Origin: Ascidiella aspersa
Taxonomy: Eukaryota
Assembly (NCBI GenBank): GCA_963924565.1
Contig: OZ004613.1
Coordinates: 30,194,001 to 30,258,000, forward strand
Length of the DNA stretch: 64,000 bases
Direction: 5' to 3'
Made by a program: the position numbers and the translations under genes. This document shows positions 3,101 through 57,790 of the stretch, piece after piece; the first letter of the stretch is position 1, and each line of letters begins with the position of its first letter. Below the pieces are notes generated by a model. The model did no database searches. It saw only the letters and a program-made list of their open reading frames with translations, and had not been told where the DNA came from.

Positions 3101-6100
3101 AATAAAGCACAACTTTTCAAAAATCTATAAATTCGACTTTTATTAATTTGGTTTTTATGTTAAATTTTAAAACTTTTATTTTAATTTGTAGCATTTGTAA
3201 AAACATTAAACTTCATATTAAACCATTCATTTTCCACTGTTTAGCTATTACACAAATGTGTTTCGCATGATTAAAAAACTTTTTGTCGTTTAGATCTGGG
3301 TCGAGTTCATCTATGGAGAGTGGTTCGGTCCCCCCTGCGACTGCCCCCCCTAACCCCACCACAGCTGCCCCGACACCCCCTCCCCGACCCCAGGTGCACC
3401 CCCAACACACCGCCTCACCCATACCAAAACCAAGACCTACAGTAACAGCCTCCAAGTCTAATGAAATCAAGGATGCAAAGATCATTGTGAAAGGTTGGTT
3501 AAATAGCATAAAAACATAGGAATCTTTAACGACAAATTGTATTAAAATCTTAGTAAGCTCTCGCACAACCGTAATAGCTCAAAAGCTTGTCAACACTGTA
3601 CAATTGGCCGTTTAGAGTGCCATCTGATTTCCAGATTTAGTATTAGCCAAACTGGTCTTCTAACAAAGATTAAAAAATATAAAAAGGCAGAACAATTTAT
3701 CTTTTGTACTAGCGCAGCTTCACGCCAAAAAAACAAGCTATGTTTGTATATATTATGAAAGCTTTCTCTTGTGAAGTGAAGGTATAATGTAGACGAGTGG
3801 TTCCTTTTGGTTAACCCTTTGATTAAAAGAACCTCACAAGTTCTTTCAAATAGCCCTAAAACCCATAGTTTACAACCACTTATCATGTCCAAATAGTTTC
3901 CTGATACTATATATTTTTGATATATTAGTTTTGCAGTATTTTTAAGTTTTGTTGAGAATGTTTTTTCTAATTAAATTGGTTTATGCATAAACAACAGTCT
4001 TACTTAGTGAACATATTGCATGTTGCTTGTTGTATTCAAATTACAGCGCGCTAACATTCCAGTAATTACAGCGCCACTGATTGACGTTTGTTCTTAGATT
4101 CTGAGAGGAGGTTAGACGGGCCAACGCCCCCTCCACGCCCACATCCAACAACCAATGTAAGCACATCTTTATCATTCTTTGCATTTCACTTGTTTTTGTG
4201 CTAAATTTCACAAAATTGCAAGATTTAAAGTTTGCCAAAATGTTTGGATTAAAGTCTGCAGTTATTTAATCTTAAACCCATTGTTATGATGCACAATTTG
4301 TAACAGATTGACTGTTATTGTACCTTGTTATTTAGATTATTTTAACGCCGTTATATCCTCGAGCAAGTTAATTGACACTTTACCTACCATGACTTAATTA
4401 CCTCGCCAATTAGCGCTAATATTAGCAACAAAGTAACTCGTATGCTATCCAAGTATGTAACACTAACAAATAGTAGAAAAAAGTTTGATTAAATTTGTTA
4501 CTGCTATCTATATCTTCCTTTTTAAATTATTTTTTACTTAAAACAAGAAAAGGGTATCGCGACTTTATACAAACTGATACGTAACTTGCTAACTTAACAT
4601 AATTTCTTAAAGCTAAAAACGCCAATATTGGCAGCATTTTCGGTAAAGCATTGTTGTGCAACCTTGTATTATGACGTCATACAGAGCAAGGGCGACAAGG
4701 ACGCGAAACAGACGCAAGAGTCGTTCGCCGACTTCAGCAATTTCAACAAAGCACCGGAAGCTAAAGTCGCCCAGGTCGAAAAAACGAAGGAAGTCGAAGT
4801 GAAAGTTGAGAAAGTTAAGGCGAAAGCACCGAAGGAGCCACCAGAGAAACCTGTACCAGCACCAAGACCACAAAGTAAGGTTCTAGATCACTAAGCGATG
4901 ATTTATAAGCTTTAATTAACAATTTTTAGTTTGAATTTTCATATGCATATCTTGTTTTGTAATTGAGATTGTAATAAAGTTCAATCAAATATGAGATCAC
5001 AAAATCGCACCAAATTTTCCCAAATATTTCAATTACTTCAGAAAGCCCTTATCACTTTTCTTAAATGAACGCTATAATTTGCCCAAAAGTCAATAAACTT
5101 CCTTTTCACTCTATGTTAATACTCGATTTTTTCTACATTTGTAGAAGAAGCAGCAAAAGCGGCTGAAACACCAGAAAGCGATAGCAAAGACCTCGAAGCT
5201 GACAAAATGCACGGGAAGAAGGTATTTATGGTTGAAATCAAACTAAATAAGGCATAAGTGTAATATTGCTCAATGAAGATAATGCTGATTTCGCGGGATG
5301 TTTTAAATAAATCATAGCATAAATATTACATTTGTCGTAGTTGTGTTATACTGTTAATTGCTTTAAAAGATCTATTGTTATTTGGAGGAAATTAACTGCA
5401 AAATTCTTTTGTGTTAGATTTTTTTAAAGAGTCTTTAACAAGTTAACAATGGTTAATTCGGCAACCGAAAAACAAACGTGGAACCATAATTTCCGTATAC
5501 CTAGAAAATTCATAAAGTGCTAGTTACTTTGTTTAACTCTTTCCCAACCTTTTTTACACCGTACCCCCTTTGGAAATTTTTAAGGAATTAATGGCCCCTA
5601 TTTTTTTTTAAATTCGGAAAAAAAATTAAGAAACGTCATTCTAATTAAAAAACTGGTTTATACAGTACCCAATAGTTAGAAAAAAAACCTAGGGGGCCAT
5701 GGCCCACAGGTTGGGCCCTGGTTTACCGAATTAAAATTGTTTTAATTGTAAATCCCCCTAAAATTAAAGAATTTTTTAATTCAAGCATTAAAATCGGTAC
5801 TTATTTTATTTTTGCCGTGCCTTGATTTAAATATGTTACCCCAGGCGCCGGTTAAGCCACCCCGGTCGCGAGTTCTTAGCTCTGAGGTTTGCAAACCCGA
5901 ACCGATGGTTAACACGTTGAGGATACGAGGGAGTGAAGAAACGACCATAGCACCAGCTCCTAAACAAGGGTGAGTTGTAGGGTTTGTGGTAAACTAGGCT
6001 GTTCATTAATATGTTCCGAAATTATGGGAGCGAAGTTACACGACTACAATGTATGTAAATATTCACCCCACTGTTTCACTTTTTTGCAGAGAAAAATGCT

Positions 6101-6638
6101 AGTTTTAAGATTAAATTAAGCTCTACATTCGAACTATTTTTAAAATGGACAAAATTAGTTGGCCAGTTTATGCAACGCCTTAAATTGGGAGTAATATGTA
6201 GTTTGTAGCCTAATAGTACGCAGTTGATTTTTTTTTAAACTCTAATTATATAGCTTAAGTTATTTAAATTAATTTAAATTATTAGGCTTGACTGGGATTT
6301 ATTTTTTTATATTTTGTCAACGAAATATCTTGTCTTAACGACATTTTTCCGCGTTTTAAGACCCCCCTGGCAAAATTTGGCTAAAGTTTAAATGATTTAA
6401 GGTATTGTGATCGTCACCAATGCAACACTTTTAACGTACCATTACAAATACCTTGGTATGCACACACAGATCGAACCGAAACAAAAGCGAACTCCAATCC
6501 ACGATTCGTGAGCTCAAGAACCGCAACACGCAACTCACGAGGTTAAACGGTGACCTTCAACAGCAGCTCAAGGACGTGATGCAGACCAGAATCACGGTCG
6601 AAATGACGATTCACCAGATGAGACCTTTCACGCAATGA
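188..6638 (+). CDS. REPS1: RalBP1-associated Eps domain-containing protein (REPS1/REPS2 homolog), 3' portion; 5' exons lie before the window
   Basis: Ten phase-consistent GT-AG exons: 188-288, 399-612, 1584-1664, 2665-2812, 3294-3493, 4098-4156, 4685-4874, 5145-5221, 5845-5969, 6470-6638 (TGA). Motifs match REPS1 as recalled: EQWETFSDRTSSSTTLANFD, HPVPVRVTPS, PPPRP repeats, FADFSNF, and the C-terminal coiled coil [35 protein letters not shown] (REPS1: [35 protein letters not shown]). Confidence 0.9.
2305..2456 (+). repeat. interspersed repeat family A (~85 bp unit), two tandem units
   Basis: Consensus tggaggttgtagttagacgtagaatgaatatcaaagcccatacagaagtaggtagcattttgaacgtttcgaata. Other copies near 7570, 9060, 19490, 21470, 30370, 31140, 37741, 50795, 55790, 57526 and 60090. 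Confidence 0.85.
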
Positions 6639-9600
6639 TAGCTCTTACGGCGTGATGGAAATCATCTATATCTAAGCACTCACGATCGCAACTTTTCATA
6701 TGAAAACGGTCACGCGTCACGGCAACTCATGAAACACAAGAGTGATGCTCATTCATCACGATCACATGAAAAACAGTATTTTTTTTATAAAATCCAAAAC
6801 TACCCGCAGCATAATGGCTGAAAAATTTATCATAAATGCTAAGAAAAAAATTAAAGTAAGGTTGCACAGGAGAATTTAACGTTTTAAATTAACTTTTTCC
6901 AACCATTATATTCACTTCTCACGAGCTTTTGTATTTATTCTATATTATTACCAGAAAAACTTATTTTTATTAAATCTTTTCTTTTAATAATAATCAGACC
7001 CTGCATCAAAATCCGTTGCACCTAATCGCAATATTTAACACGCACAGAACCTTTAATCCAACAGCACTTTAAACAATTTGCTTTATAAGCCAATAAATAT
7101 AGTCTCTTACTTGTATTACTTTAATTGTACAGAAAGATTAAACCAACAGAAATCCCAATACTTAGACCACTGAAGAGGCTACCTCACACCACAGACCGCG
7201 TATAAAAATAAACTGCGATCTTATACACAAAATTTCCACTCATTCCTTTTCAAGCCGCTTTCTTTCGATTCGAAATTGAACGCAAAACGACTCTATGGTG
7301 CATTTTTGTAAAGTTATTTCATGTTGCAGAAATCGTAGTGTTCAATATAACGGTCCTCTTGTAATTTACTGGATCGAAAAAGTGGTTTAAACCGTTTTGC
7401 AAAAAGGTTTAATGCCAGCTGTTCTGAACGCATACCCGTTCGTTCTGTGCAAACCCCTTCCAACAAATCAAAACGGTCGATTTTTAGATGTAGTAAGAAT
7501 ATTATGGTCCGTATAGAATGAGGTAGCATTTTGAATATTTCATTTATGATGTTAGAATGTTGAATGAGTTATTCGAAACGCTCAAAATGCTTCCTACTTC
7601 TGTATGGGCTTTGATATTCTTACTACACCTCACTACAACCTCCAACCATTAGCTCCAAAATATGTTTCATGTTTCAACAGCAAATGCCAACCGTCTAGCA
7701 CCAGTTTTATTAATTTCCTGTCTTGCCACAAATCAATCGCATGTCTTAAAAAGATCACTTCAGTTTAAAACGTCAAAAGTTCACTGATGCGCTAACTTGC
7801 CCTACATACTTGGTCCAACTTGGACGTAATCAAGCTAAACTGTTGCCCAAAGTCATTAAAATGTGCTTAAGTGTGGCGTTCTAGTGCGTTTCTATGTTGA
7901 AGTGCGAGAGAGATCTTTATTTGCGTTTTGTTGTATTTTTCCGAGAAATTCTATAGTTGTGTTTTCATCTTTTCAGCAGTGGCGTGAAGAAATGTCCGAT
8001 ATTTAAACCCTTTTTCCGATGCCCGATATTATGGAGAAAAAGTATCGCCGATACCAAATGACGTCATTACTACTGTGCTCAAACAATCAAAATAGATAAA
8101 ATTGATTAAACGATCATTTGGCTAAAATTTTCTTTAGCATTAAGAAGTAAATACATTTTCAAATTTGAATCGCAATTTCTGGCTAAAATTCTTTATTGAT
8201 TTGGTAATATATGTTGACACCGATATTTCCACTTGGCATCAAGTATCTGATACGACACAAAGATCATGCTGTTGCAGTTTTCAACCTTTTGAGTAAACGT
8301 ATATTTTCACACACACATTTTCTTGCGACTTACTGCGCTCTAAAGGTCGCATAGGCCGTTACCACTTCACTCAACCTGTGTGTGATATTTATTATTGAAA
8401 GACCACAACGTCCATTAAAAAGCTGCTGATGATTTCCACCATTTATTAGACTTATTACGCAAATGTGACGCTAATTATGCATTTATCTTTCCCTAATAAT
8501 TCGTCTTTAACATTTACCCTGTCTAACGTTCATATTTCGGAATAGAAAACGTTCAAAATACGTACAAACAAAAGTAGAATTATGTCCCACTTAATATCAT
8601 GGTCAAATGGTGACAGCTGGTAATTCAACTAAAATGCGGCGAACACAATATGTGACGTTAAAAGCGCCTTAATATTTCGCAGCGACGAAATAATACACTT
8701 CGCAGCGACGAAATAATACATATTTCCGAAGGTTGTTTATGACTAATTGTTCGCATAATTCTGATGACAACCGATGTGTTAATTTGCCCGCATATCGTCG
8801 TCCTGTAGTCACGTAGTTTCCGTGTGTTTTGTGAATTGTGTTTTGCTGCCATGCGTTTGTACACAGCAACATTTTGTCGCCGCTACTGTTTCCATTTCTT
8901 GTTATTATTAACCTGTCGTCGTTCGGCTTTGCTTGGTGGAAAACGCGAATGCAGGCAAAATAAAAAAAATATTTTTATTACCAGCGCTTTTAATTCTTCT
9001 ATTTAAAAAGATTCGGAACAATATTTTTTTAAGACCAATGGTCAAAATAGAATGAAAGCATTACAGAAGTAGGTTGAATTTTCAACGTTTCGAATAGGTT
9101 TTTATAAAATAATATTCACAAAATGCCACCTACTTCTGTGTGGGCTTTGGCAGTCATTTTCTACGTCCAACAATTATACCAAAATATTTATAATTATTTT
9201 CGCCTGTAAGTCTAGAACTATATGCAGGTAGCAATCCCAAGATATCGTTCTTGACGTTATACATGTATCTTCAGCAGTCTTTAAAAAGTACGAATTTTTA
9301 CTTTAAAAAAAAAAAACAACGATCTTGCAAATCTGTGCATTATGCTAGTGACCTAAAAATAAATCAGCTTTTTTTGAAACACAAAACAACTTGCCCAGAA
9401 TCATGTTAAATTTGGCGTATTTAGTGTGGTGATTTTTCTTGTTTTTTTCAATTGTCAAAATACAGGAAACCAGATTCGTCAGAAGCCATTTATTTGTAAA
9501 AAACACCACCAAGGAAACAGCGATTAAAACAAAACATTGACAACAATAGGGTTTCTTTTGCATAGGGAGATAACAACGCTAGGCATTTGGTTGCAGGCAT

Positions 9601-44300: not shown

Positions 44301-47300
44301 AATTATTATTACACATTTGGAAAAACGCCTTATTAGTTATTTCCTTAAGCATTTTGTTTCTTTTGACTTGAAAAACATTTAGAATCCTATGTAGGACTTT
44401 TTTATGTAAGAAAAAGTTTTTTTTGTTTTCTTTTTTAAACTTGAATTTAAAACTTTTAAATTTGTTGCCAAATCACCTTCTTTTTGTCTCTCATCGATCC
44501 TTTTCCTCGAACCATGATTTTGCATTTTGTTTCTTGTTCGAGCTGTTTTGCTGTAAGGCCTCTTGGTCCAAGCAAACGTCCCACAAAGTTGTACTAAAAA
44601 GTGAAATATGAAGCATTTGACTTTTTACAGACAAATAGCAGCATTTAAAAGATAAAATAGCAGTAAAGTATGATCATTGGTATTTATAGATTCTCATCAA
44701 TTTAGCTTTTACAAAATGTTTTTTCTTCAAACAACTTTTTTTTTATAAGGCAATATTTGTTGTGATTTGCATAGTAAACAATGTATTGCAGATGATGCAA
44801 AACTTACCTTTTTCCAATAAATTTTAACAACAAAATTACTGAAAACATTGGGTGAATTATACATTTGGGTGGACATGGTAAAATATGACAAGACACAATG
44901 TCAGATGTTTAATTAATGGAGTAAAACTGTCAATGCTATCTCATTTATGTCACAAAATACACCACAAGTTATTTTTACTTGCCGATAGGGAAAAGTGCCA
45001 AATTTAGACCTAAGTAAAACATCCTTTTGCCATTTTTTGATTCGTGTTGAAAAGGAAGCGTTAAATAAAGGGAACAGGAAAGTTATAGAGAGTGAATGAG
45101 CAATTCAGTGTCTGATCACTGCCTGCATTTCCTGGGAGATGCCATTTACATTATTCACAACTGTCAGTAGTCGCATTGCTCGCATGCTAAGTTGTTGGTG
45201 GGGAGCAAGGACAGAAGTTACCGGCAAAAACACAAGTCCAAACATGAATAATTGATTTTGGTCACAGTTATGTTTTACCTTGTTTGTGGCAAAGCGTGTG
45301 GTTCGGCTAGCAATGAAAAAAGTAGGCCATTGGCTAACAAATTAAAAGTCTAAAAGTTTGTGAATTTTCCTAACATTTTAAATTATTGTTTTTTTATAGT
45401 TTATTGATTTGAACTAAATCTTTAGAACAGATTCCACTTGAATAACTTTTTAAGCAAAACTGATGATGCATTTTGCGTAACGATAGAATTCTGCTCTTTT
45501 TGAATAAAGTTGTTTTAGATCTTTTTTATAACCTTTGTGGTTCTGTTTGGATCAGCATTTTAGTTGCTGAAAACTTGAGTAAGAACCAAGAAAATTTTCC
45601 AACTATTTAAAAGAATTTCTTTTTTGTTTTATTTTAATGCATTTCGGTAAAACAACTGCAGACAAAATTTAGAGCTTTTGTGAATGCATTGACATTATAT
45701 AGTGTGTTCAGCTAACAATGGGTGTCAAAAAATTAAGGCTGTTATCTCAAAGTACTGATCAAATATCATTTTTTTTTACCTCTGGGTGATCCTTAACAGG
45801 GACGTAGACTTTCTCGGTGAGGGTGAGGGTGGGACCAGTTGGTGGGGGGAGTTCGAGCGGTTGTTTGTCTCCGTTTTGGAAGAGAACTGATCGAACTTTC
45901 ACAATTTCTAAAAAAAATTAACAATTTGCTAATTTCACACATGGCAATATTTTTGGGTAATTTTTACACAACATAAAACATATCAAAGTTCATTGCAATT
46001 AAAAACTAAACAATAATATATTCCAACTTTAAAACAACTAAAATTTGAAACTATTACTTAAAAATTTAAACGCTTTCCATCATTTTTCCACTACACAAAT
46101 TTAATTTTGTAAACCACATAGTTATTTTTTAAGTTAACCACAAAGTTATGAAAGTATTTATACATTTTAAAAGAAAAAAAAACAAACAAATAAATAGTAA
46201 AATAAATGAACAATTATTGTAAGCAAGGTCCTTTTCCTCATACTTTTTTGTGTGTATCACCAAATATGGTTTGAAGCATTGTATGTGTCACACACTGGGT
46301 GATATGTTTGAGGTCAAATTTTTTTATGATTTATTTGAGTATAAGCCAGACAAAGTGTAGTGGGCGTGTGGGTTGGCACACTCATAAAACCAACTCAGTC
46401 AATGAATCAAGTATATATTTGGTTTAGGTAAATATTCAATCACAGTGAACAAACAAAGTGTAAAAAAACGATGTTTTTACACCACCTAAAATACATTTAT
46501 GCCTATAAACTAAATTACATTTTGAAATATGAAAATAATTTTTTAAACTTTTATTCGTGTGGGAATATCCTATAATTCTTTTAAAATGTTTGGTTTTAAA
46601 TATTGTCTCATATATGTTTGCAGGTAACTTTATATAGGTTTACATTGTTGCAATGATATCAAGGGGTGCAAAGTCTATTTCTAATAACTCTTGCGGAGTG
46701 CTTGATCTGATAAGTGACATTTATTACTTGAAACACATCATAGATGCATTTAATTGCAATTTGATTAGGTTAAGCAATTTACCAAGGGGAATTAAAGACT
46801 CTTTAAATGTGCATATGGCCAATGTTAATTTCCTTCAAAGACACTTTGGCTTTCCTTAAAAGCAAAATAAATAGTAGGGTCTGCGAGAATTTAATAGAAA
46901 AATTGCAAAAGCTTAAATAGCAGATTATTTAAAAAAAAAAATTTATCTTTTGATATAAAGGCTTTAGTTTTTTCACATTAATTGAGATCACATGTTATAA
47001 CTTGGCGTCTGATGGCCATATTGCTGGATTGATTTATTTGTGTGATATCAGATGAGCCGGATATGGCATTAAGGAAATGAGTGGGCAGTTCTAACTCTAC
47101 TAATAACTTGAGTATTCATTGTGTAATGGTGTGCAGATAAAGTTACACTTCAGTTGCATACAATCGTCGTAACACTGCACAACATATGGTTGTTGAAACT
47201 GAACAGTGCAATATTTTTTTGAATGCTTATAATTATCATTTTAAATCTTCTAAATTTAGAACATCTTTTCACAAATAATTTACATTGAAATTATTGAAGC

Positions 47301-50300
47301 AATTTAAATTGTTATTTGTATACCAATGTTTTAAAAATCCATAAATATATATATACTGCTGTGTTCAGAAAACAATAATATCAAAATTGTATATGCAAAT
47401 GAAATCAAGTCAAACCAAATTTGCAGCCCTGTAAATTCACTTTTAACTTTGACATTAATAATTGATGGCATAGTGTGAAATTCTCTGCTGACAAAACTGA
47501 GTTATAATCGATCAAATTGCTTGCACATTGCCAACAGTAATAACATCAAAACAAATTAATATATTTTTCCAATGCGTTTTGCTGAAATTTGTTTAAATAG
47601 TTAGGCCAAAAAAATTTGTAAATGTAGCCAATTTGCTTTAGTTAATATATGGCTTATAAAAATGAATAAAAAAAAAACTTTTTATGATGGTGTTCAATTT
47701 CTAAGTTCTCTTACCTTCATCTAATAACCTCTCAACATGTACAAAAATGCTCGGGTAAAGTTGACATTGTTTTTTGTCCTTGAGTAATTGCTGCAGGTAA
47801 TTAACCCGTTCTTTTGTCTTCTTGTCCAAATGTGAACTTTGGGGTAAACTTTGCAGCATGGCTGCTGTCGTTGACGCAATTAAATTCGACGCAGAGTTAC
47901 TACTACTGTTCATGGACCCCATGGGTGATTGGACCCCATTGCTCAACTGGGGCAAACTGTTGGGAACCGATACAGTTGGCAAGGGGGGAGGGGGAAGTCC
48001 TGCTACGGACATGCTCGGTAAAGGGTTTACGATCGAATGGCTCGTGAATCTTTGCTGCGCGTTGTCGATCTTGAAAGCCAAGTCGGGAAACTGTTGCATG
48101 TTACTGAAATTCATGTTTTATTTATTTATTGCACGTCGGCGTCTCTAGCATCGTTTGCAGTTTGGTTAGTGGAAGATCGGTTAGCTGAAATTGGTTAATG
48201 GCACCTACAGTTAGTATCTGGAAATAAGGAACATCTTGTTTTAATCTTGTCTCAACGAAGCCGAAATGGCCCTTTATAGCACAAGAACACAGCTGCCAAT
48301 TTTTTTTTTCACTGTAAAACCCATTAAGTAATTCCCAGGAAATTCACACTTTGGGGTTATTTGGGTTAAACAACCCAATTTAAAGTCACTAGACTGTAAC
48401 TTCTTGCTGGTATTCAGAGCGTAAAGACACGCATATTAATCGCTACAATAACAACACCTTAACACGCCCTTAAATCCACGCGCCAAGTTGCGATAAATTT
48501 AAAACTCTAACGATTGCAATAAGCGCTGGTTACCGCAAGGGCAAGTAACATGCCCTCCTATTTGAGAGAGCGAACTTTCACACGAGGTCCGGTACAAATT
48601 GCAGACTGGCTGGCAATTCGACCTTCTAACGTGTTTGTAAACAAAGGGTACGTCTGTTGGCGACGAAAAAGCAATCTTGCACTTTAAATTAGTCGCCAGT
48701 TTGCCGTTTCCTAATACAGAGTATACGTCACCTTAATACGAGGAATTATTGCAACCTATAACAGTTTCACAGCTGATAAAAAGCGGTTAATCACCGAATT
48801 AAACGCATTTAAACAGATTACTATCAAAATTATACTGTTATTTCATACCAACATATAAGAAATAGTGTCAACAACTATATCAAACGAACAATATTACGAC
48901 ATATGCTTACTACTAAACTAAGATAACAAGCAACGATGTTTCAAACTACACTAAGTAGTAGTGTATGCCAAAAATTATTTAGAAGAATTTAACTTGTTTC
49001 GTGGCTGATTTAAACTGTTTTATCGCAATTATACAACTAACTGATCGTATATAAATGATGGAATTTATCGAAATCTGGCGTCAGCTATTTAGAAATAAAA
49101 GGCAGATTGCCTTCGTAGCTAGAACTAACAAAAGCAAATGCTTACAAAAAACTAGGAAAATAACTTAAACTGCGCTACTCGTAAAAACCCAACATACTAA
49201 AGCAAAACTGAACCGCACACGGTACGAACGGCCAACGCAGAGCTATTCTGTTTGCCAACAACTTCATTATTAGCCGGCGTTTCCTGCGAGCAATTGCTGG
49301 CGACAACGTCAGTCGACAATTGAAGGCAGAGCGGCCCTTCTCTTAGCACTACTCTACAAGTGAAGTGCTTGGCTGCGATGCGTTTTTCTTAATCGCGCGT
49401 CTCTCTACCTAGCTGTGAAATGGAGCCAACTATGCGCTGTCGTTTCTAGTTGCTTATTCATTGGGAACCGCTTTGCTAAGCCATTATACAGGCCGGGCCT
49501 CTTTTTAAACCTGTTTTGGAACCATTTTTGTAACTTACCGGCCCCTAAACAATGGTTAAATTAGTAACCTTGCTGTATTTTTCGTTAAAACTTGTCTTAA
49601 AAAGCTTTAAATCTTGGTTTAAAAAGACATCCTTTCGCCCTTTAAGTTGGCCAATAAAAGTGGCCAATGTTGTCTGGTGATTCAGGTTGCAACACGAGTG
49701 CTTAATGGGATTTTAAACTGACTACTTTGCGGAAATAAATGACGTACTACGTTCAGTAGACCAGGTGTGTGCAACTATGCACAACATTGTTTCAGTTTGA
49801 TGTTGATTGATAAAAGGTTGAGCTTACATTGAAACTTGTGCAACACATAAAAGCTAAAGCGGCCTAACGTAAATAAAAAACTTGCCGTAAAAAAAGATTA
49901 TTATGATGTTTTAAGACCACAAGTCCACAAGGTTATTCAGACACTGAGTTTATGCGAAATAGTCTTTATAGTCAGCCTAAAAAACAAAATCTTTAAATTA
50001 AAACGAAGCTTTTGGGTAAGCGATTTTAAACTAGTTTTTTAACCTTTTTACAATAAATTTTACCAAAGGAACTCAAATAAAGAAGGACAGATTACAAAAA
50101 TCTATTTGGACGTTTTATTGCGCATTTGGGAATTTTTAATTTGGATTTGTGCTTACCGAGATTCGGTAATTATAGAAACGTTGATACATGTGACAGATTT
50201 GTAATTCATCAATAATTTATAAAGTAACCTGTCATTTTCTTCGATGCAACGGCTAAGAAACACTGTGTTCTAGGGAAATACTTAGAAACGTCCAGCCAAA

Positions 50301-53300
50301 CCTTTGTAACGTGGGTTAATACAGAGGGCCACTAATTTGGCCTAGCTATGCACTAGGGAAAGACTACTGTACTATATATGCTTAGGTTAAATTTTAAAAA
50401 TATATATTCAAAATAGGAAGCCCGTGGTTTGCTTTTTATTCCAAAATGGTCTTAGAACTTCTTTTAAACATGGCTGTAATTTTAAGAAATACAAACACGG
50501 GCCAGTGGTAATGTGCAGGTGTGTGTTTTATACTGAAGTTCTTTCGTAAATAAAACTGATTTAACATTACTTTTTAAGCACTACCCTTTAACACATTTTT
50601 TTTTTTAAAACTGATTTTAACATTACGATTTAAGCACTACCCTTTAACACATTTTTTTGCATAGCTTCTTAACGGTTTTGTGCGATTCCAATGTTTATAC
50701 ACATTTCTTGGTTTATTTGTGAGCTGTGATTGATAGGTGTTTCTGTAAGTTGGCGAACGTCAAATTCAACTGTTGAAAATAAACAAAAAATCTATTCGAA
50801 ACGTTCACAAGGTACTATCAATTTCTGTATGGGCTGTGGTATTCATTCTACGCCTAACTACAACCTCCAGCAATTTCTTAAGATTGATTCGAAACATTCA
50901 AAATGCTTCCTTATTCTGTATGGGCTGTGGTATTCATTCTACGTCTAACTACAACTTTCAGCCATAAAGCCTAAAAAACACTGGAGTATTGCAAGCATGC
51001 GGATTGCGCAAGTGTGGTTCGAACCAAACCGAAGCGTCGTAGTTAAACTATGCAGAAACGCATCAGCCGTCCTGTCTCGGCTGCGGAATTACCGTGGCAG
51101 GAATTTCAATCTCAAGCTCACCTCTTATCTCATAAACAGCGCCAAGGAGCCGAGGCGCTTTTAATTACAGCGGAAACCTGTGATTTGAGGCCGGAGTCGC
51201 TGCTTGTGAGGGCTACTTGTGTCTGCGTCCACATGTGATGATTATAATGCGATTAATTTGGACCGTAGACGCCAACGCCATGTGTATCGCCGCAACGGAA
51301 TGCCCCACGCAACCGCGTTGGAAGCCAAAGACTTAACCTGGGTTTGGAGCCTTTTGTACACAACACCGTTTAAACCGAATTTGTATACTTTTTACATTGT
51401 TTTGTTTGCTTTGTTTTAATATAACGTGGTTTCTTCAAAAAACACACAAGGGTTGCAAATTGCATGATAAGGGGTTTACAATGGAAGGCCGGTTTATTTT
51501 CAAGCAGGTTCACGGCTTTTTTAAACATAGGCGGTCTTAACCGACATTTTTTTTTTTCAAAAATCTAAGGCGAAAAATTCTCACAAAATTATTGAGAAGT
51601 GTTACTCATTTATCATATTTTACGACCATTTTAAAAACAATTGCATTCATTTTTTCCCCATTCTGCCCTTTTTAAAATATTCCTCATATTTGGGCTCCAA
51701 GTGCATTTAATTTGCCAAGATAGCGAGAAAATGGCGTTTAAAGGTGTAATTCGTCTCGACACCGGTCTTAACAGCAGTTGTGTGTTTTTCAAGATCTGGC
51801 GTGCTAAGCTTGTAATTGTTTGCAATTTGAATTGCGAAGCGTTGTTTGCACGAGAGATTAACTACGGTTTCGTTACACTTATTTACTGCGCTGTTCACAG
51901 CATGTACACTGTACAGGGTAACACCGACTAACCACTGCGCTGTAAATCTGTAATTACGGTTAGAACTTGGAGTAAGAATCAATGCCACAAAATTTCGCTT
52001 TCAAAATTCAAAGTATATCTAAGTGTTGTAATGACTTTAGTCAATAACTTCACTTAAGTGCACCTTATTCGCTCAATTTAAATGACTTAACTTGCTTTAG
52101 TCATTGATGCAAAATTACTTGACTTCTCTTATTGTGTTAAATAACTTGAAATTAAGTGTTTTTATATTTTTTAATAAAATTGGTTTATTTATTCCACTTT
52201 TTGACATACAATTTAATTGCTATACTTGTTGCGTTTTGGTTCTTTCTTCGTTGAAATGTTGCTCATTAACAAACAGGTTTGCTAATTTTAAAAGCATAAC
52301 GTTTTATTTGTATGTCAATGACTTGACTTAGAATTGACTCCATCAAACACTGACTTGACTTGCTTTTTTTGCAAATGACCTGACTTGAACTTAATTTATT
52401 TTCCAATAACTTAACTGGGCTTAGACATTTCAAAATGACTTGTTTGCGACACTGGTATATAAACTATGAAGAATGCACTACTTTTGAACAAAATTTTGAC
52501 CGGCAAAATGCCCTTTATTTTAATCGCAGGCCAGAAAGAATGAGGAAATCAAGGAAACGTGCCTAAAGCCTTGCTATGTACGCATTCCTTCATAAAGTTT
52601 CGACACCTAATTAATGAAGTGTAACCGGAACGAAACTAGCTGAAGTTGTTTGGTTGTTTCGGGAAATGCGCAAATTTTTAATGTGCAGCACCCTTAGTGC
52701 ACTGAGTCACATTTCCTTAAGCGATAGACTTTGTTATACACAATGCACCTAATCGATAAAGTGTTAAAAACAGATGTTTATTAGGGACAGAAATAGTATC
52801 CTAAATTTATTTTAATCGTCTTTTAAAATATAGCTGTAACCACATACATGGTTATTGTTGCATAGATAGATTAAATCCTTGCGGTATTTTTAAATTTGCG
52901 AACGATTACGAAAAATAAATCTAAAAAACGTTGACAAAGTGCTTCTCAACGAAAAACCCATTACATATTTCGGATAACCCATAACATTCCCTATAGTTAA
53001 GGTAATTTACCCGAAAAATAATCTTTCGCAAACTAAAATTTTAATTAACATTTCCAAACACAGCTTCCTAAACTGGGGGCCACAACAACGGGTTTGGGGG
53101 ATGTGGGTAAAACATCTTATCTTAAGTTATACTGTTTGCAACTTTTAATACGAAAATGTAAACACAAATCGAGCACAGTCCCCAACTGAACTGCACATTG
53201 CCCCAACAAATGTGTGCGGAAACAGCATTCAATACTTCCAAAATGCGAAGGGTTGCGAAAAGTTTTAAGAAATTAAAGAGACGAAAGACGGAAAAGAAAA

Positions 53301-55505
53301 AAATGGTAGAATTTGGAAATTCCTTCTTAACAATAAAACACTAGTCTTTATAACCTTTTTACCATGGTAATTCCCAACTCCCCAACGCCCCAATTTTCAC
53401 AAACCCGGCCCATTTACGAGACGAGCCTTCAGCAATTTGCACGCGCCACCCCGGTTTGTGACGTCAACAATGCCGCACCCCACAAGAAGATGACGTCACG
53501 AGCATAAATCACCGTCGACTTTCACCGACAGCGAAAAACTACAAATCGCATGTAGTCGAGATCTGTTAATCTACAAGCTCAGAGTGGTTTGATCTGCTGG
53601 AATGGCGCACTTGGACCACCCTGGATGCTACGACTACGCTCGGTCGATCTTCAAGTAAATAACTTCGCTTTTCTTGTCGAGGATTTGGATGATTTACGGC
53701 CGCCATTAGGCGCGCAATAAATTACAAGGCTGTGCTGGCATTGTGCTTTGGGATGTCGTCGACAATTTACCACTTTCGCAAGTTAGTATCTGAACAATAG
53801 TACATTACAAAGTACTGGTTAAGATGCTTTATGCTGTGGCCAATGCGAAAATACCAAGGAAAGAACGGCATTTCCTTACTTTGAAGCAACATCCTTACGC
53901 CCTTACTTTGAAGCAACATCCTTACGCCAATTTGACTGTTTAATATCATTTTTGATAAAAGAGTAAAATAGAGCCTATACGGTTTCTATAATTGTCTAAG
54001 GTTTCTATAGTAAGCTCCATTTTAATCTTTTTTTTTAGTTTTTAGATCTTTCCTTTCATGTTATAAAACTTTATCTCAAACATTTCATAGTGATATCTTA
54101 ATTTCAAGCTGTGTTCCTTTAATGTATGGCCGACTGTAATGTTAGTCTGGGATAACATTGTGCAAAAGACGATTTTTGTGTATGAATCTTGTGTCAAATT
54201 TGTGAATGTACTTTTAGGAGGCTTTCATCGGAGTGTTTATTCGAACACGATTTCCATAAACCCTAAACCAGTGCTTCTTAAACTATTTTTAGTTTTGTTT
54301 ACCCCTAGCATCTATCTCCAGATTTCTATTAACCTCTTATGGTTGGTTCACCCCTGCAAAAATTTTGTTTACCCTGGGGTGAACCATTCACCCGTTTAAG
54401 AAACACTGCCCTATCACAGCCAAGGACATCAGAAAATAGCTCAACCTAAAAAACGTTTGCCCTGGAATAAGTTCAAGCGACCGAACAAGGAAACGGGTGT
54501 TTTTTTCTGTCTTGTTTTTGCCTCGAATCAGTGTGTTGATTCTCAACTTTCATATTCCACCCAACGGAACATAAATGTCCTACGAATTCACTTTAATATT
54601 AAAGTATGTAGCTCAATAGCGCCACTGTATTTTGGTGGTTGTATGTCAATGCTGCGAAGGCTCTTTTGTGTATACAATGTATACTCGCGATATATATGAG
54701 TGTAAAGCACACAAGCTTGAAGTTTGTTTTTATGAACCTTTTTTGGTTACGTTGCAACATTTTAAAAGGATGCAATAAAAAGTTGCCTGCATGTGTAATA
54801 GTTTCTTCTTCCGCCAAAAGTGAAAAAGTTTCATAATTTTCGTGAATTTTCATGTAGAAGTTAAGAAAATGTTTTGCTAGTTTTGTTGTCGGTTAATTGT
54901 CAAAAAAAGCAGAATTTGGTCAAATTTGGCTAAAAATACATAAAAACATCATTTGTTGTTTTTGTCGTGAGATTTTTTGGAAAATTACAATACTTTGATT
55001 TCTCTTTCTCCCAAAAAAAATTTTGCTATTTTTTGCGTTTCCGGTGACAGAAACATTAAAAAACCTAAAATCACAGCATGTTAAACAACTAACCTTCGTC
55101 TAAGATGCGGTCGACGTGCATGAAGCACCCGCTCAAGCCCTGGATCTGCTTCTTATCCTGGAGAAGCTGCTTTAAGTAGAGACACTTGTCCCGCATCTTC
55201 CGATCATCCTCACTAAGAGCAACTCCTCCTCCGTTGCCATGGTGATTTGCTCCACAGGAGGCGCTCATTCCACTCCCGGAAGAAGGCGAGGTGCTGCTGC
55301 TTGGGGGACTGATCAGGGGGGTCTGCTGGTAGCCCAGGGGGGCCTTGGGTAGTGCAGGGGGTGGGGACTGTAGCATGCTGGGCGGGGGGAGGCTGCTGGC
55401 CACTGGGACGCCGCCCTGACCCGCCTGGGCCAGCAGCTGGAGTTGAACCGGATGCATAAACTGTTCGTCGTGTATCGCTGTGGGGGAAACACCGACAGGT
55501 TGAAA
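29302..55505 (-). CDS. QKI: Quaking (STAR/GSG family KH-domain RNA-binding protein), whole coding span
   Basis: QUA1 (two alternative exons), KH with GPRG loop ([64 protein letters not shown]), QUA2 ([23 protein letters not shown]), a Pro/Tyr-rich tail and RVHPYQR. The isoform from ATG 48114 to stop 29302 totals 1227 nt (408 aa). Confidence 0.97.
31332..31479 (-). CDS. QKI: quaking tyrosine-rich exon (last common exon)
   Basis: TIMTNGLS...[27 protein letters not shown], homologous to vertebrate LIYTPYEYPY...EYPIEPSGVL; phase-1 donor G|GTAAGA. Confidence 0.92.
31995..32116 (-). CDS. QKI: quaking proline-rich exon
   Basis: [41 protein letters not shown], resembling the vertebrate PRIITGP...LRTPTPAGP region; phase 1/0. 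Confidence 0.9.
32411..32448. promoter_or_regulatory. RFX X-box cluster in a quaking intron
   Basis: Perfect GTTGCCATAGCAAC (32411-32424) followed by GTTGTCTAGGAAC and an overlapping GGAACCATAGCAAC. Confidence 0.6.
32655..32739 (-). CDS. QKI: quaking QUA2 exon
   Basis: [28 protein letters not shown], phase 0/1. Confidence 0.96.
33529..33672 (-). CDS. QKI: quaking KH exon (second half)
   Basis: [48 protein letters not shown]; 144 nt, GTGAGT donor. Confidence 0.97.
35855..36010. repeat. repeat family D (CCGATA/TATCGG-rich, carries a TGACGTCA)
   Basis: Related in reverse orientation to 7995-8075 (ccgataccaaatgacgtcattacta) and to the 21939-22010 fragment. Confidence 0.55.
37741..38080. repeat. 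family A repeat, inverted tandem array (foldback)
   Basis: Two + units (37741-37870) followed by two - units (37905-38080). Confidence 0.85.
39807..40152. mobile_element. hAT-type MITE (TIR CAGYGGTTCTCAACC)
   Basis: cagcggttctcaacc ... ggttgagaaccactg terminal inverted repeats with subterminal gggcca motifs; no clear target-site duplication. Confidence 0.75.
44477..44593 (-). CDS. QKI: quaking KH exon (GxxG loop)
   Basis: [39 protein letters not shown]; 117 nt, phase 0/0. Confidence 0.97.
45780..45907 (-). CDS. QKI: quaking shared exon (end of QUA1, start of KH)
   Basis: tttttag acceptor; (E)[42 protein letters not shown]; GTAAAA donor. Confidence 0.95.
47715..48114 (-). CDS. QKI: quaking alternative 5' coding exon B (Pro/Ser/Gln-rich N-terminus plus QUA1 copy B)
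   Basis: ATG in the context AAAAC-ATG. Encodes MNFSNMQQ...[32 protein letters not shown], then a phase-1 donor G|GTAAGA at 47714. Confidence 0.9.
49146..49400 (-). promoter_or_regulatory. candidate promoter / non-coding leader exon for quaking isoform B
   Basis: CpG-rich segment ending at a GTAAGC donor (49145), with a matching ccttatttccag acceptor at 48218, 103 nt upstream of ATG 48114. Confidence 0.45.
50551..50658. repeat. ~55-bp tandem duplication
   Basis: taaaactgattt(t)aacattac..tttaagcactaccctttaacacattttttt occurs twice. Confidence 0.85.
50795..50965 (-). repeat. family A repeat, two tandem units
   Basis: ttctgtatgggctgtggtattcattctacg(c/t)ctaactacaac occurs twice. Confidence 0.8.
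52021..52454. mobile_element. MITE family B copy
   Basis: agtgttgtaatgactttagtcaataact ... aatgacttgtttgcgacactg, with internal gacttgact repeats. Confidence 0.7.
53874..53928. repeat. 27-bp tandem duplication
   Basis: ccttactttgaagcaacatccttacgc occurs twice. Confidence 0.9.
54269..54408. mobile_element. hAT-type MITE
   Basis: cagtgcttcttaaac ... gtttaagaaacactg TIRs; degenerate 8-bp TSD ccctaaac / ccctatca; internal tcacccc/ttacccc repeats. Confidence 0.7.
55094..55505 (-). CDS. QKI: quaking alternative 5' coding exon A (Pro/Ser/Gln-rich N-terminus plus QUA1 copy A)
   Basis: Encodes ...[32 protein letters not shown], then a phase-1 donor G|GTTAGT at 55093. First in-frame ATG is at 55457 and there is a candidate acceptor at 55506; the true 5' boundary is uncertain. 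Confidence 0.85.
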
Positions 55506-55559
55506 CTGCAAGGGGCAGGGGAGCTGCTGAATCGCCTCAATCTTGACGTTTTATTTTTG

Positions 55560-55700
55560 CCGCTGCTGATTCGTTAGTTCAAGCTGTTGCTGGTTGCTGC
55601 TTCTCTCGAGGTTTGGCGCCCTGCTATTGGTGCGCACGCTGATCACGTGACGGATTAGTGGCCAATGGGAAGGGGCGACAGGTTTGGGGATTGAGTTAGT
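55560..55700 (-). promoter_or_regulatory. candidate proximal promoter of quaking isoform A
   Basis: GC-rich segment with E-box CACGTG (55644-55649), CCAAT box (55662-55666) and a GGGGCG box immediately upstream of exon A. Confidence 0.45.
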
Positions 55701-55789
55701 AGTGATTAATACAGATCGTTAATGATGGCTAAAGCTCTGCAAAAACAAATTAACATGTATGAAGCGTATAACAATGGTTATCATTGGAG

Positions 55790-55878
55790 CATAATAGTTG
55801 GAGGTTGTAGTTAGACGTAGTAAGAATATCAAAGCCTTTACAGAAGTAGTCAGCATTTGGAACGTTTCGAATAACTCT
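55790..55878 (+). repeat. family A repeat
   Basis: Near-consensus unit just upstream of the quaking exon A promoter. Confidence 0.8.
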
Positions 55879-57790
55879 TTATTCACGTCCAACATAGCGG
55901 GAAGGAACCCAATGTTTAACATGTGGTAGAATCGGTATGTCGTTATGACAGAATTGGAGGTTATAAAAAATATTTGTTTTAAACTGTCAAAAATGCCACA
56001 ATTTTTTGTTGCATTCTGTGCAGCTTCTGAAAAAATCTTCAGAGGAATTCTGTCCGCTAGGGGCGCTCAAGTTCTACATCTTTCCACAACCGCTCTGTTT
56101 TGTTTTGAGATTTTGAATCAAGTGCTACTCAACTTTTGCCAGAGCAATTATTCTGAATACGTACGTATTTTTTTACAAAAAAATGATCAGGCGTCTTTAA
56201 GATAAAGCAATGCCAGTTTGAAATCTGTATAAATTTCTTTGCTCTGGTAAAGGAAGTTAGAAATCTCCTACACACAAATTGAAAATTTTTAAATGAAAAA
56301 ACAAAATTTTATAAATGAAAAACAGTTGAAGTCAACAATGTACGAACTCCAATGATCTACAAGTGCGATTCTTTTTTGTGAGATTTCAGGAAAAACACTT
56401 GCACAGCCAGAAACTCGTAAACCAGAAGTTTATTTACGATGAAAATTTTTATTTTGATACGGGCCAAGTTTGTAATTCCACAGGATTTGCCTGAAAGCTG
56501 ATTAAATAAACAGTTAAAGAAACAAAGAACTATTTTTTGCCGCACATTTTTTCACGATTTTTGAACAGAAAGCCACAACAAAATAAACTAACCTTAAAAA
56601 CATTGTGAAAAAATGTTTCGGAAAAGGATTTCTTTTTAGAGAAATACTTGATATCTCTTTTTTTTACATTCTTATGTTCAATTAGCCGCCGTACATTTTC
56701 TCCACGAACAATTTCTCCAACGCCTTGAACAATTTTGTCCAAAATACGACGATTTTTTGCACGATTTTCGGATTTTACGCGCATTTCTCCGGCCAAGGCG
56801 CGCTAGATTGCAGCTTTGGCGCTTTGCACGCAACAAATTCGCGTCTATTCTTATCAAACAATCGCGATCGCGATCGGGTAAACAAAGCACCACTATGCTC
56901 TCACAATCGCGCTCTCTTTCACACAAAGAACTTATTTTTCTCGTGCACCACTTTTTATTTTATGTACCCGTGACCGATGTGGTTCATCAGATTAATTTGA
57001 AGTTTGAATATGTTCTGTGCATTAGGCCAGGAGAAAATACGAATGAGCATTCGGACGATTCTTTATTTTTTTTTTTTTAACAAACGACTTTAATAATCTG
57101 GATTTAGTTAAACAGCCGATGGAAATTCGTAATTTGGAAATTTTCAAACAGATAAATAGAAATTAAAGTAGTCGAAAAAAACACTCAGGTTATTGAAAAT
57201 TTCAATTCTTCAAAAAGAACGTATATACATAAATACAGCTAAAGAATTTGCACAGATTCAACGGCTAAATAGACGTAAATAGCCTACCTATATACATTTA
57301 TAGCGTACTGGTCGTTTATATTGACATTTATCGAAATTCTACAAAAAAAATATTCAGATTGTACCCTTCGCAGTTCTACAAAATGAGTTCTTTCTTAAAT
57401 AGCCATATAAATTGAAACGCTATCAAAACGCCACCAAGTTTAGAGCTTAATGGCTTGATGTGTTGTTCAACTTGGAATAAATACACGAAGCTCAAACAGA
57501 ATGCATTTTGAACGTTAGATAATTAATGGCTGGAGGTTGTAGTTAGACGTAAAATAAAGCTCCAAAGTTGAAAATGAATAAAGAGTTATTCGAAACGTTC
57601 AAAATATGCGACCTACTCCAGTATGGACTTTGATATTCGTTCTAATCCACTTAGTCTTGCGAGCTTATGTGGTATGTCTTGTATAATGTTGCGGTATGCA
57701 TCGGATTTTCCCACTCGCACCGATGTGTGCAGATAGTAGGATCACAACTTGGCTTTATTGCTTGTTTGAAAACTCACATAAACCATGACC

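What the first reader, a model, noticed from the sequence alone, without database searches (positions are those of the whole stretch)
47715..55505. One quaking gene, two interchangeable dimerisation domains: duplicated alternative QUA1 exons
Seen in sequence: two separate exons about 7 kb apart (55094-55505 and 47715-48114) each encode a long Pro/Ser/Gln-rich N-terminus and a QUA1 helix pair. The two QUA1 copies are [28 protein letters not shown] and [28 protein letters not shown] (17/28 identical, with a reciprocal K/Q swap and a different loop). Both end in a phase-1 donor splitting the Glu equivalent to mouse QKI E48 and can splice to the single shared exon at 45907. Only one KH/QUA2 body exists in the window. 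Established: QUA1 mediates STAR-protein dimerisation, and vertebrate QKI diversifies mainly at its C-terminus with a single QUA1. Inference: promoter choice swaps the dimerisation interface and disordered N-terminus while keeping RNA specificity. This would allow A/A, B/B and possibly restricted A/B dimers, a combinatorial system I do not know to be described.
Basis: partly seen in the sequence, partly recalled or inferred. Interest (0 to 1): 0.9.

Follow-up and report, generated by a model that had tools for sequence, protein, structure and literature searches.

The report
Tunicate quaking: two alternative QUA1 first exons
This sea-squirt quaking (RNA-binding protein) gene has two alternative first exons, each encoding its own version of the dimerisation helix pair; the arrangement is real and conserved across tunicates, and both isoforms are already in public annotations, but nobody appears to have studied what the swap does.

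Summary
On the minus strand, exon A (CDS 55457-55094) and exon B (CDS 48114-47715) each start with an ATG. Each encodes a disordered N-terminus plus a Pfam STAR_dimer (QUA1) match above the curated cut-off, and each ends in a phase-1 GT donor inside the Glu codon equivalent to QKI E48. They are the only two QUA1 matches in the 308.6-Mb genome.

RNA reads and one transcript-like contig show B spliced to shared exon 2 (45907). It is seen in relatives:
- Phallusia, Clavelina, Ciona and Styela each have an A-type and a B-type protein with (near-)identical bodies.
- Oikopleura has a B-type protein, plus a metatranscriptome A-type with the same body.
- Two intronless larvacean-like contigs differ entirely before that Glu codon and are 97% identical after it.

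Three further genomes keep the order A, B, exon 2, KH. A and B separate by one tree branch (93/99), so the duplication predates the ascidian/larvacean split.

A and B differ at four of six non-polar dimer-interface positions. Whether this restricts A/B pairing is untested; a heterodimer prediction gave only weak support. This is a new variant of a known kind, of moderate interest.

The parts
55094..55457 (-). Exon A coding part (distal alternative first exon). It encodes a Pro/Ser/Gln-rich N-terminus with a conserved SPP...SPSS cluster, then A-type QUA1 ([33 protein letters not shown]) and the first base of the split Glu codon. The 5' leader extends upstream by an unknown length.
   Evidence: sequence. 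(PF16544, 39.3 bits). (orthologous exons in at least 8 other contigs, all ending LDE followed by a G and the donor). (pN 0.05-0.15 with synonymous sites saturated).
55088..55093 (-). Donor site of exon A (gttagt), phase 1.
   Evidence: The same phase and position hold in all orthologous exons, where genomic ORFs read LDE-G into the intron.
55694..55757 (-). Conserved non-coding block about 240-300 nt upstream of the exon A ATG; a candidate promoter element. CCAAT boxes and an E-box lie between it and the ATG.
   Evidence: 78% identity over 64 nt to L003 at the equivalent place. (sequence). Function is inferred.
47715..48114 (-). Exon B coding part (proximal alternative first exon). It encodes an N-terminus with conserved DLxxKxxN and [15 protein letters not shown] motifs, then B-type QUA1 ([32 protein letters not shown]) and the first base of the split Glu codon.
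   Evidence: (PF16544, 57.9 bits). (RNA depth about 2.8 on the gene strand; joint 47715>45907). (100% identical over 38 residues to Clavelina and Phallusia B).
48115..48219 (-). 5' leader of exon B, at least as far as the transcript-like contig reaches. It contains the conserved block ATACTAACTGTAGG (48217-48204) and two further CUAAC motifs.
   Evidence: X2 record 9 spans 47715-48219. (block conserved in L001 and L002, partly in L007). (motif positions).
45780..45907 (-). Shared exon 2. It completes the Glu codon and QUA1 helix 2 ([23 protein letters not shown]...KDHPE).
   Evidence: (joint 45907-47715 with CT..AC ends, i.e. GT..AG on the gene strand, in 4 reads and 1 contig; the loose end at 45780 reads into [10 protein letters not shown] of the KH exon). 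(conserved in L001, L002 and L007).
44477..44593 (-). Exon 3, the start of the single KH domain ([39 protein letters not shown]). Coordinates are approximate.
   Evidence: The loose-end consensus matches its first 30 bases.

Best explanation
The window holds the 5' half of the single quaking/HOW-type STAR gene of an ascidian, most similar to Phallusia.

Transcripts begin with either distal exon A or proximal exon B, never both. Each first exon supplies its own start codon, its own disordered N-terminus, and its own copy of QUA1 helix 1, the loop and the first half of helix 2. Each is spliced in phase 1 to the same exon 2, which supplies the rest of helix 2. The single KH/QUA2 body follows.

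The gene therefore makes two protein isoforms with identical RNA-binding parts but different dimerisation modules and N-terminal tails.

The exon pair arose by tandem duplication of the first coding exon in the tunicate stem lineage. B kept the ancestral HOW/GLD-1-like sequence and A diverged. Both have been under purifying selection since.

Shown: exon anatomy, conservation, the B to exon 2 junction in this species, and A-type and B-type mRNAs in relatives.

Inferred:
- That A is used in this species.
- That separate promoters drive the two exons.
- That the swap changes dimer properties or regulation. I put about 0.3 on real homotypic preference and about 0.5 on the main difference lying in the tails and in expression control.
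For: Anatomy in this window:
- Exon anatomy and frames.
- Both exons pass the Pfam STAR_dimer cut-off.
- There are only two QUA1 matches in the genome, and one KH exon in the window.
- The B to exon 2 junction is seen in 4 stranded RNA reads and one RNA-like contig, and exon 2 runs on into the KH exon.

Conservation of exon A:
- Exon A is present with intact frame and donor in at least 8 other contigs.
- L001, L002 and L007 keep the same order A, about 5 kb, B, exon 2, KH.

Paired isoforms in relatives:
- A-type and B-type full-length proteins with (near-)identical bodies exist in Phallusia mammillata, Clavelina lepadiformis, Ciona intestinalis and Styela clava. Oikopleura dioica has a B-type protein (P0039) plus a metatranscriptome A-type (P0030) with the same body.
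- Intronless contigs L010 (A) and L011 (B) are unrelated before the GAA of EIVKVRS and 97% identical after it.

Selection and age:
- pN is 0.02-0.15 while synonymous sites are saturated.
- In a tree of the 38-residue QUA1 parts, one branch separates A from B (93/99), larvacean and ascidian A group together, and tunicates stand apart from outgroups (95/94).

Fold:
- The A-type orthologue aligns to the QKI STAR structure 4JVH from the start of QUA1 (E 1.4e-75).
Against: - No read or contig showing A joined to exon 2 was obtained for this species. The one RNA run laid (X4, only 24 reads on the stretch) gave no loose end of 3 or more reads at 45907, and its exon 2 depth (3.05) is about that of exon B (2.8).
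- No A-type transcript of this species is in the protein collection.
- Exon A alone finds no solved QUA1 at E <= 0.01, so it is the more derived copy.
- No transcription-start data exist for either exon.
- The TATA box upstream of B is not at a conserved distance.
- Nothing here measures dimerisation.
Confidence: 0.85

Rival explanations
1. Same gene structure, but the QUA1 swap is functionally neutral for dimerisation. The first exon was duplicated to gain a second promoter, leader or N-terminal tail. Its QUA1 half came along only because the ancient intron sits inside QUA1. A and B would heterodimerise freely, and the isoforms would differ in where and when they are made and in tail-borne regulation, for example the Ser-Pro cluster of A.
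For: - All polar and aromatic key residues listed for QUA1 dimers (pXqua Y41, Q44, D48, F62, H64, R67, E72; PMC3592866) are identical in A and B.
- The A/B heterodimer prediction reached the tool's mark. Score 0.50, best of 3 controls 0.01. That mark was reached by 51 of 78 solved complexes and 2 of 108 mismatched pairs. But at 0.60 or under it was reached by only 5 of those 78 solved complexes and by all 4 mismatches that passed, so the support is weak. Runs agreed in at least 95% of contacts and partner pLDDT was at least 78.
- The N-terminal tails are also type-specifically conserved.
- C. elegans asd-2 uses two tissue-specific promoters and first exons without touching the STAR domain (PMC3875643).
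Against: - Four of the six non-polar interface positions differ between A and B, and each state has been held for the whole tunicate radiation. B is C52/Y55/I-or-V61/L68 everywhere; A is aliphatic at 52 and 55, with a small or variable residue at 61.
- B's QUA1 part is 100% identical among three ascidian genera. This argues that the exact surface matters.
- The prediction cannot tell family members apart, by the tool's own caveat.
Confidence: 0.45
2. Exon B mRNAs are not made from a promoter of their own. They come from the long primary transcript started at exon A, by spliced-leader trans-splicing to an acceptor just upstream of exon B. Isoform choice would then be a splicing decision, possibly autoregulated by quaking protein bound to the CUAAC motifs there.
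For: - A polypyrimidine tract plus CAG ends at 48218, immediately before the conserved ATACTAAC block. The X2 transcript contig stops at 48219, two bases into that AG.
- Three CUAAC motifs lie within 100 nt upstream of the B start codon, and similar ones are found in L001 and L002.
- SL trans-splicing is common in tunicates (my own knowledge, not tested here).
Against: - The AG is not conserved in L002 or L007.
- The contig carries no extra leader letters beyond 48219.
- No spliced-leader sequence was seen or searched for.
Confidence: 0.15
3. Exon A is a decaying or silent duplicate in this species, or belongs to a different gene or KH body, so only the B isoform exists here.
For: - No A to exon 2 read was seen in the one RNA run laid.
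- Exon A scores lower against Pfam and finds no solved QUA1 structure on its own.
Against: - The frame, start codon and donor are intact.
- The QUA1 part is 92% identical to the expressed Phallusia A isoform.
- Exon A is under purifying selection in 7 genomes.
- There is no other QUA1 exon anywhere in the genome, and only one KH exon in the window.
- The RNA-like run X2 holds 54% of the exon A words. Its exon 2 contig depth (52) is about twice that of its exon B contig (24), which leaves room for a second upstream exon. Contig depth is only a rough guide.
Confidence: 0.04

Closest known systems
C. elegans asd-2 (quaking/HOW orthologue) isoforms ASD-2a and ASD-2b
   Same: A STAR-family gene with two tissue-specific promoters and two distinct first exons: 1a in hypodermis and pharynx, 1b in body-wall muscle and pharynx. 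These give N-terminally different proteins (PMC3469465; PMC3875643).
   Different: [quoted passage not shown] In the tunicate gene each first exon carries its own diverged copy of most of QUA1, so the dimerisation module itself is swapped.
Vertebrate QKI-5/-6/-7 isoforms
   Same: One quaking gene makes several proteins with the same RNA-binding core and different functions (PMC9786888 and PMC5695090, listed).
   Different: Vertebrate isoforms differ at the C-terminus (localisation) and share one QUA1 exon. The tunicate isoforms differ at the N-terminus and within QUA1. Tunicate transcripts also vary at the C-terminus (L010 versus L011), so the two kinds of variation may combine.
Solved QUA1 homodimers of QKI, pXqua, GLD-1 and Sam68
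   Same: Both A and B keep the helix-loop-helix pattern and the key residues Y41, L42, Q44, L45, D48, F62, H64, R67, L69 and E72 (pXqua numbering; PMC3592866; alignments). The intron sits in the codon of the Glu whose E48G change abolishes QKI dimerisation.
   Different: A and B both have the short HOW/GLD-1-type loop. They differ from each other at interface positions 52, 55, 61 and 68, and A has lost the loop proline in this species.
Genes with tandemly duplicated, mutually exclusive variable first exons (e.g. clustered protocadherins, UGT1A; from my own knowledge)
   Same: Duplicated 5' exons, presumably each with its own start site, join one set of constant exons. The variable exon encodes an interaction surface.
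   Different: There are only two variants here. The variable part is half of a small dimerisation hairpin in an RNA-binding protein. No evidence yet shows that the variants differ in partner specificity.

Membership tests
STAR/GSG protein of the quaking/HOW/GLD-1 type | QUA1 dimerisation region (Pfam PF16544) N-terminal to the KH domain | tested here: met
   Exon A scores 39.3 bits and exon B 57.9 bits against a cut-off of 26.3. Each covers profile positions up to 35 of 53.
STAR/GSG protein of the quaking/HOW/GLD-1 type | Key QUA1 residues: Tyr-Leu at the start of helix 1, Gln and Asp on helix 1, Phe-x-His at the start of helix 2, Arg, Leu, and the Glu equivalent to QKI E48 | tested here: met
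   All are present in both A and B. The residue list comes from PMC3592866. The Glu is the split codon completed by exon 2.
STAR/GSG protein of the quaking/HOW/GLD-1 type | Maxi-KH domain followed by QUA2 on the same transcript | tested here: met
   The KH exon lies in the window and is linked to exon 2 by the loose-end consensus. QUA2 was not looked for in the window. The A-type orthologue P0031 aligns to QKI structure 4JVH across QUA1, KH and QUA2.
STAR/GSG protein of the quaking/HOW/GLD-1 type | QUA1 actually mediates dimerisation | not testable with these tools
   Only a prediction is available. The A/B heterodimer scored 0.50 against a best control of 0.01. The tool rates this as weak support and warns that it may reflect memory of solved QUA1 dimers.
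Alternative (mutually exclusive) first coding exons | Two exons, each with its own start codon and a donor in the same phase, and one common acceptor | tested here: met
Alternative (mutually exclusive) first coding exons | Each first exon is found joined to the common exon in mRNA | tested here: inconclusive
   In this species the B junction is seen and the A junction is not. In relatives both are seen: paired annotated isoforms, and intronless contigs L010 and L011 that diverge exactly at the junction.
Alternative (mutually exclusive) first coding exons | Separate transcription start sites | not testable with these tools
   No CAGE or 5'-end data are available. The B transcript contig ends at 48219. 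There is a conserved block upstream of A.
asd-2-type N-terminal isoforms (STAR domain common to both) | Alternative first exons lie entirely upstream of the STAR domain | tested here: not met
   Here each alternative exon encodes QUA1 profile positions 1-35. ASD-2a and ASD-2b share the STAR domain (PMC3875643).

The most novel reading that the evidence does not exclude
The two QUA1 versions have co-evolved interface residues: B has C52/Y55/I61/L68 and A has I52/L55/C61/I68. As a result A and B dimerise mainly with their own kind. One tunicate gene would then make two insulated quaking dimer pools that can be regulated and localised independently. That role is filled by gene paralogues or C-terminal isoforms in other animals. 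The Ser-Pro cluster next to A-type QUA1 would put only that pool under proline-directed kinase control, as reported for HOW.
Probability: 0.25. Interest if true: 0.75.

Novelty: new variant of a known kind. Interest (0 to 1): 0.5.

Why it matters
QUA1-mediated dimerisation is essential for quaking function; the mouse E48G change is lethal. It is thought to let the protein read bipartite RNA sites.

An isoform pair that has kept the RNA-binding body constant, while holding two different dimerisation modules apart since before ascidians and larvaceans split, is a natural experiment on what QUA1 does beyond simple pairing. Ciona is a tractable system for isoform-specific knock-outs, reporters and domain swaps.

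The finding also flags an annotation problem. The Oikopleura dioica model P0028 fuses both QUA1 copies into one protein, and RefSeq names the two isoforms of one gene 'quaking-A' and 'quaking-B' as if they were the fish paralogues.

Tried and rejected
**Reads**
- I had one read-laying run, limited to 6 kb. I chose 45700-51700 (exon 2, exon B and part of the A-B intron) so that B junctions and any foreign loose ends at 45907 would both show.
- Depth in the RNA run was only about 3. No loose end of 3 or more reads appeared at 45907.
- Exon A itself was therefore never laid.
- X1 and X3 turned out to be DNA-like (even depth over introns) and say nothing about expression.

**Searches for an A-type transcript of this species**
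- The exon A search returned only genomic ORFs running into the intron.
- The A-specific part of Phallusia P0031 as query returned no protein from this species.

**dN/dS**
- Synonymous sites are saturated, and my simple Nei-Gojobori script gave pS near or above 1.
- No ratio is quoted, only pN against saturated pS.

**TATA box at 48278-48273 as the B promoter**
- Rejected as evidence. It lies 55-60 nt from the contig end, and its distance to the conserved block differs in L001 and L002.

**Trans-splice acceptor at 48218**
- Kept only as a minor rival, because the AG is not conserved.

**Solved-structure search with exon A alone**
- Nothing at E <= 0.01.

**Literature**
- The Ohno et al. 2008 paper on asd-2 is not held.
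- Searches for a description of tunicate quaking N-terminal isoforms found none.

- Exons were searched one by one by reference, and full-length comparisons used orthologous proteins returned by the searches.
Full report
**What is in the sequence**

The gene runs on the minus strand.

Exon A has its ATG at 55457 and encodes 121 residues. These are a Pro/Ser/Gln-rich tail followed by [33 protein letters not shown]. One further G at 55094 precedes the donor gttagt.

Exon B has its ATG at 48114 and encodes 133 residues ending [32 protein letters not shown]. One further G at 47715 precedes the donor gtaaga.

Exon 2 starts at 45907 behind a tttttttag acceptor. Its first two bases, AA, complete a Glu codon with either G, and it continues [22 protein letters not shown]...KDHPE down to 45780.

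Both exon peptides match Pfam STAR_dimer (QUA1) above the curated cut-off. A scores 39.3 bits and B 57.9 bits, against a cut-off of 26.3. Each covers profile positions up to 35 of 53, so the rest of the domain lies in shared exon 2.

A six-frame search of the whole 308.6-Mb assembly finds only two QUA1 matches, exons A and B. The window has a single KH exon. Exon A therefore has no other body to join.

**Expression in this species**

The run search with exon A returned three small runs of unknown kind and one 2026 RNA-seq run. I had one read-laying run, limited to 6 kb. I laid 45700-51700, which covers exon 2, exon B and part of the A-B intron.

- The RNA run X4 is stranded and covers exon 2 (depth 3.05) and exon B (2.8), but not the intron between them.
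- Four X4 reads, and one contig of run X2, skip 45907-47715. The ends are CT..AC, which is GT..AG on the gene strand.
- A loose end at 45780 reads into [10 protein letters not shown] of the KH exon.
- X2 behaves like RNA: exons at depth 23-52, and the B-exon 2 intron at 0. Its B contig reaches 48219.
- X1 and X3 are DNA-like.

B to exon 2 is therefore shown.

A to exon 2 is not. No loose end of 3 or more reads was listed at 45907, but only 24 reads of X4 were laid, and exon A itself lay outside the stretch.

There are two weak hints that A is used. X2 holds 54% of the exon A words. X2's exon 2 contig is about twice as deep as its exon B contig (52 versus 24). Contig depth is a poor measure, so I do not lean on this.

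**Conservation of exon A**

A search with exon A found nine proteins, all genomic ORFs that read through LDE-G into an intron. They carry MHPVQLQLL..., [20 protein letters not shown] and an almost invariant [16 protein letters not shown]...HVDRILDE.

Fetching their contigs showed that L001, L002 and L007 keep a second QUA1 exon of B type about 5 kb downstream on the same strand. Exon 2 and the KH exon follow.

Outside these four exons, and one block upstream of exon A, nothing aligns at the DNA level.

In the QUA1 parts, non-synonymous differences are 0.05-0.15 (A) and 0.02-0.08 (B) per site. Synonymous sites are saturated. Both exons are under purifying selection.

**Transcript-level proof in relatives**

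I searched with the QUA1-plus-exon-2 region of a full-length hit. This returned annotated tunicate proteins that come in pairs:

| Species | A-type | B-type |
|---|---|---|
| Phallusia mammillata | P0031, UniProt A0A6F9DPG5 | P0047, A0A6F9DQ81 |
| Clavelina lepadiformis | P0036 | P0046 |
| Ciona intestinalis | P0037, 'quaking-A isoform X4' | P0049, 'quaking-B isoform X2' |
| Styela clava | P0045 | P0050 |

Within each pair, the sequence from [11 protein letters not shown] through the STAR domain is identical or nearly so. Some pairs also differ at the C-terminal end.

In Oikopleura dioica there is a B-type protein (P0039). There is also a model (P0028) that contains an A-type and then a B-type QUA1 in a row, which is probably a mis-prediction. 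It still shows A upstream of B in one locus.

Short intronless contigs from marine samples and Logan assemblies encode complete A-type proteins (P0020, P0029, P0030, P0038, P0040) and B-type proteins (P0034, P0035, P0041, P0042, P0048).

L010 (A-type) and L011 (B-type) are unrelated upstream. From exactly the GAA of EIVKVRS onward they are 97% identical in nucleotide sequence. That is the signature of alternative first exons in one species, at the homologous junction.

**Age and direction of the duplication**

I built a tree from the 38 residues encoded by the first exons, leaving out shared exon 2.

- One branch separates all A from all B (ultrafast bootstrap 93, SH-aLRT 99).
- Larvacean and ascidian A sequences lie on the same side.
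- Tunicate sequences are separated from vertebrate, arthropod and nematode ones (95/94).

With 38 columns this is only indicative. It agrees with the diagnostic motifs: A has [11 protein letters not shown] and DR[IL]LD; B has YLQQL[LI]KD.K.C..YP..F.HVERLL.

B resembles HOW and GLD-1 ([26 protein letters not shown]). Exon B alone finds the solved GLD-1 and Xenopus QUA1 domains. Exon A alone finds none.

The likely history is a tandem duplication of the first coding exon in the tunicate stem, after which A diverged.

The window's B part is 100% identical to Clavelina and Phallusia B. Its A part is 92% identical to Phallusia A. The species is an ascidian, closest to Phallusia among the named species recovered here, and I did not identify it further.

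**What the swap changes**

The Xenopus QUA1 paper (PMC3592866) lists the dimer contacts, in pXqua numbering (QKI number plus 24):

- Non-polar contacts: M52, L55, I61, F62, L65, L68.
- Polar and aromatic contacts: Y41-H64', D48 with the backbone of 63'/64', H64-Q44', and the R67-E72' salt bridge.

HMMER's alignment of an A-type protein to QKI, together with the motif table, gives the following mapping.

| Interface position | A-type | B-type |
|---|---|---|
| 41, 44, 48, 62, 64, 65, 67, 72 | same as B | same as A |
| 52 | I | C |
| 55 | L | Y |
| 61 | C | I |
| 68 | I | L |

C52, Y55, I/V61 and L68 of B are fixed from Oikopleura to Ciona. A is aliphatic at 52 and 55 and small or variable at 61.

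The Ile/Cys exchange between 52 and 61 looks reciprocal. This is compatible with repacked, type-specific interfaces, but it does not prove them.

I ran one complex prediction for an A/B heterodimer, using 56-residue QUA1 segments of Phallusia P0031 and P0047.

- It scored 0.50 against 0.01 for the best of three controls.
- The tool calls this weak support. Its mark was reached by 51 of 78 solved complexes and 2 of 108 mismatches. At 0.60 or under, it was reached by only 5 of those 78 and by all 4 mismatches that passed.
- Runs agreed in at least 95% of contacts, and partner pLDDT was at least 78.
- The tool warns that close relatives of solved complexes pass from memory.

The result therefore does not decide between free and restricted heterodimerisation.

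The tails also differ in conserved ways. A carries a Ser-Pro-rich cluster just upstream of QUA1. The same paper notes that threonines next to HOW's QUA1 are phosphorylated by MAPK/ERK. A link between the two is my speculation.

**How the choice is made**

This is inferred, not shown.

Exon A sits in the only GC-rich 500 bases of the region, 55% against about 35%. CCAAT boxes and an E-box lie upstream, along with a block conserved with L003.

The B transcript contig ends at 48219, next to a conserved ATACTAAYTG(TAGG) block. That block contains a quaking-response-like ACUAAC, and more CUAAC motifs follow.

A polypyrimidine-CAG just before the block could be a trans-splice acceptor, but the AG is not conserved. 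Separate promoters are the simplest reading. Trans-splicing of a long A-started transcript remains possible.

**Comparison with what is known**

[quoted passage not shown] There, the isoforms share the entire STAR domain (PMC3469465; PMC3875643).

Vertebrate QKI varies at the C-terminus.

Both tunicate isoforms are already in RefSeq and UniProt. The existence of two N-termini is therefore not new data. I found no paper that mentions them or the QUA1 swap. Ciona and Oikopleura quaking are known only as notochord and muscle genes (PMC3034685).

I class this as a new variant of a known kind: alternative first exons that, unusually, exchange most of a dimerisation domain.

**Limits**

- I built no joined exon model of the window's gene. 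Exons were searched by reference, one at a time.
- The A junction in this species remains to be shown.

Noticed in passing
window 48204-48217 (minus strand): A conserved 14-nt block, ATACTAACTGTAGG, lies about 100 nt upstream of the exon B start codon. It is shared with L001 and L002 and partly with L007. It contains a quaking-response-like ACUAAC, and two more CUAAC motifs follow within 50 nt. The transcript-like contig of X2 ends right at it (48219). It could be an initiator, an autoregulatory binding site or a trans-splice region.
   Followed up: partly
window 55500-55999 (minus strand): Three ACTAAY motifs lie in the leader/promoter region of exon A, where about 0.33 per 500 nt is the window average on that strand.
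   Followed up: partly
window about 50790-50955: A high-copy repeat sits inside the A-B intron. DNA-run contig depth is 4000-8500 against a background of 55-120, with many alternative joints and loose ends. It is probably a short interspersed or MITE-like element.
   Followed up: no
window 51529-51700: Stranded RNA reads on the gene's strand (depth about 1.7 in X4) lie inside the A-B intron, at the edge of the stretch laid. The region is not conserved in related loci. It could be an unannotated exon, a transcribed repeat or intron RNA.
   Followed up: no
P0028 (Oikopleura dioica, NCBI/UniRef): This public gene model strings an A-type and a B-type QUA1 into one 380-residue protein. Transcript-type contigs show separate A (P0030) and B (P0039) forms, so the model is probably a mis-annotation.
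   Followed up: partly
L010 versus L011: Besides the alternative first exon, the two larvacean-like transcripts differ by a 384-nt segment near the 3' end of the coding region, present only in L011. N-terminal and C-terminal variation may therefore combine.
   Followed up: no
P0052, P0021, P0023: Divergent quaking-like sequences of unknown origin mix A-like (KC.YL, DRILDE) and B-like (QLLKDK) features. P0052 sits on a long branch beside the A group. They may come from an unsampled tunicate lineage and would help date the duplication.
   Followed up: no
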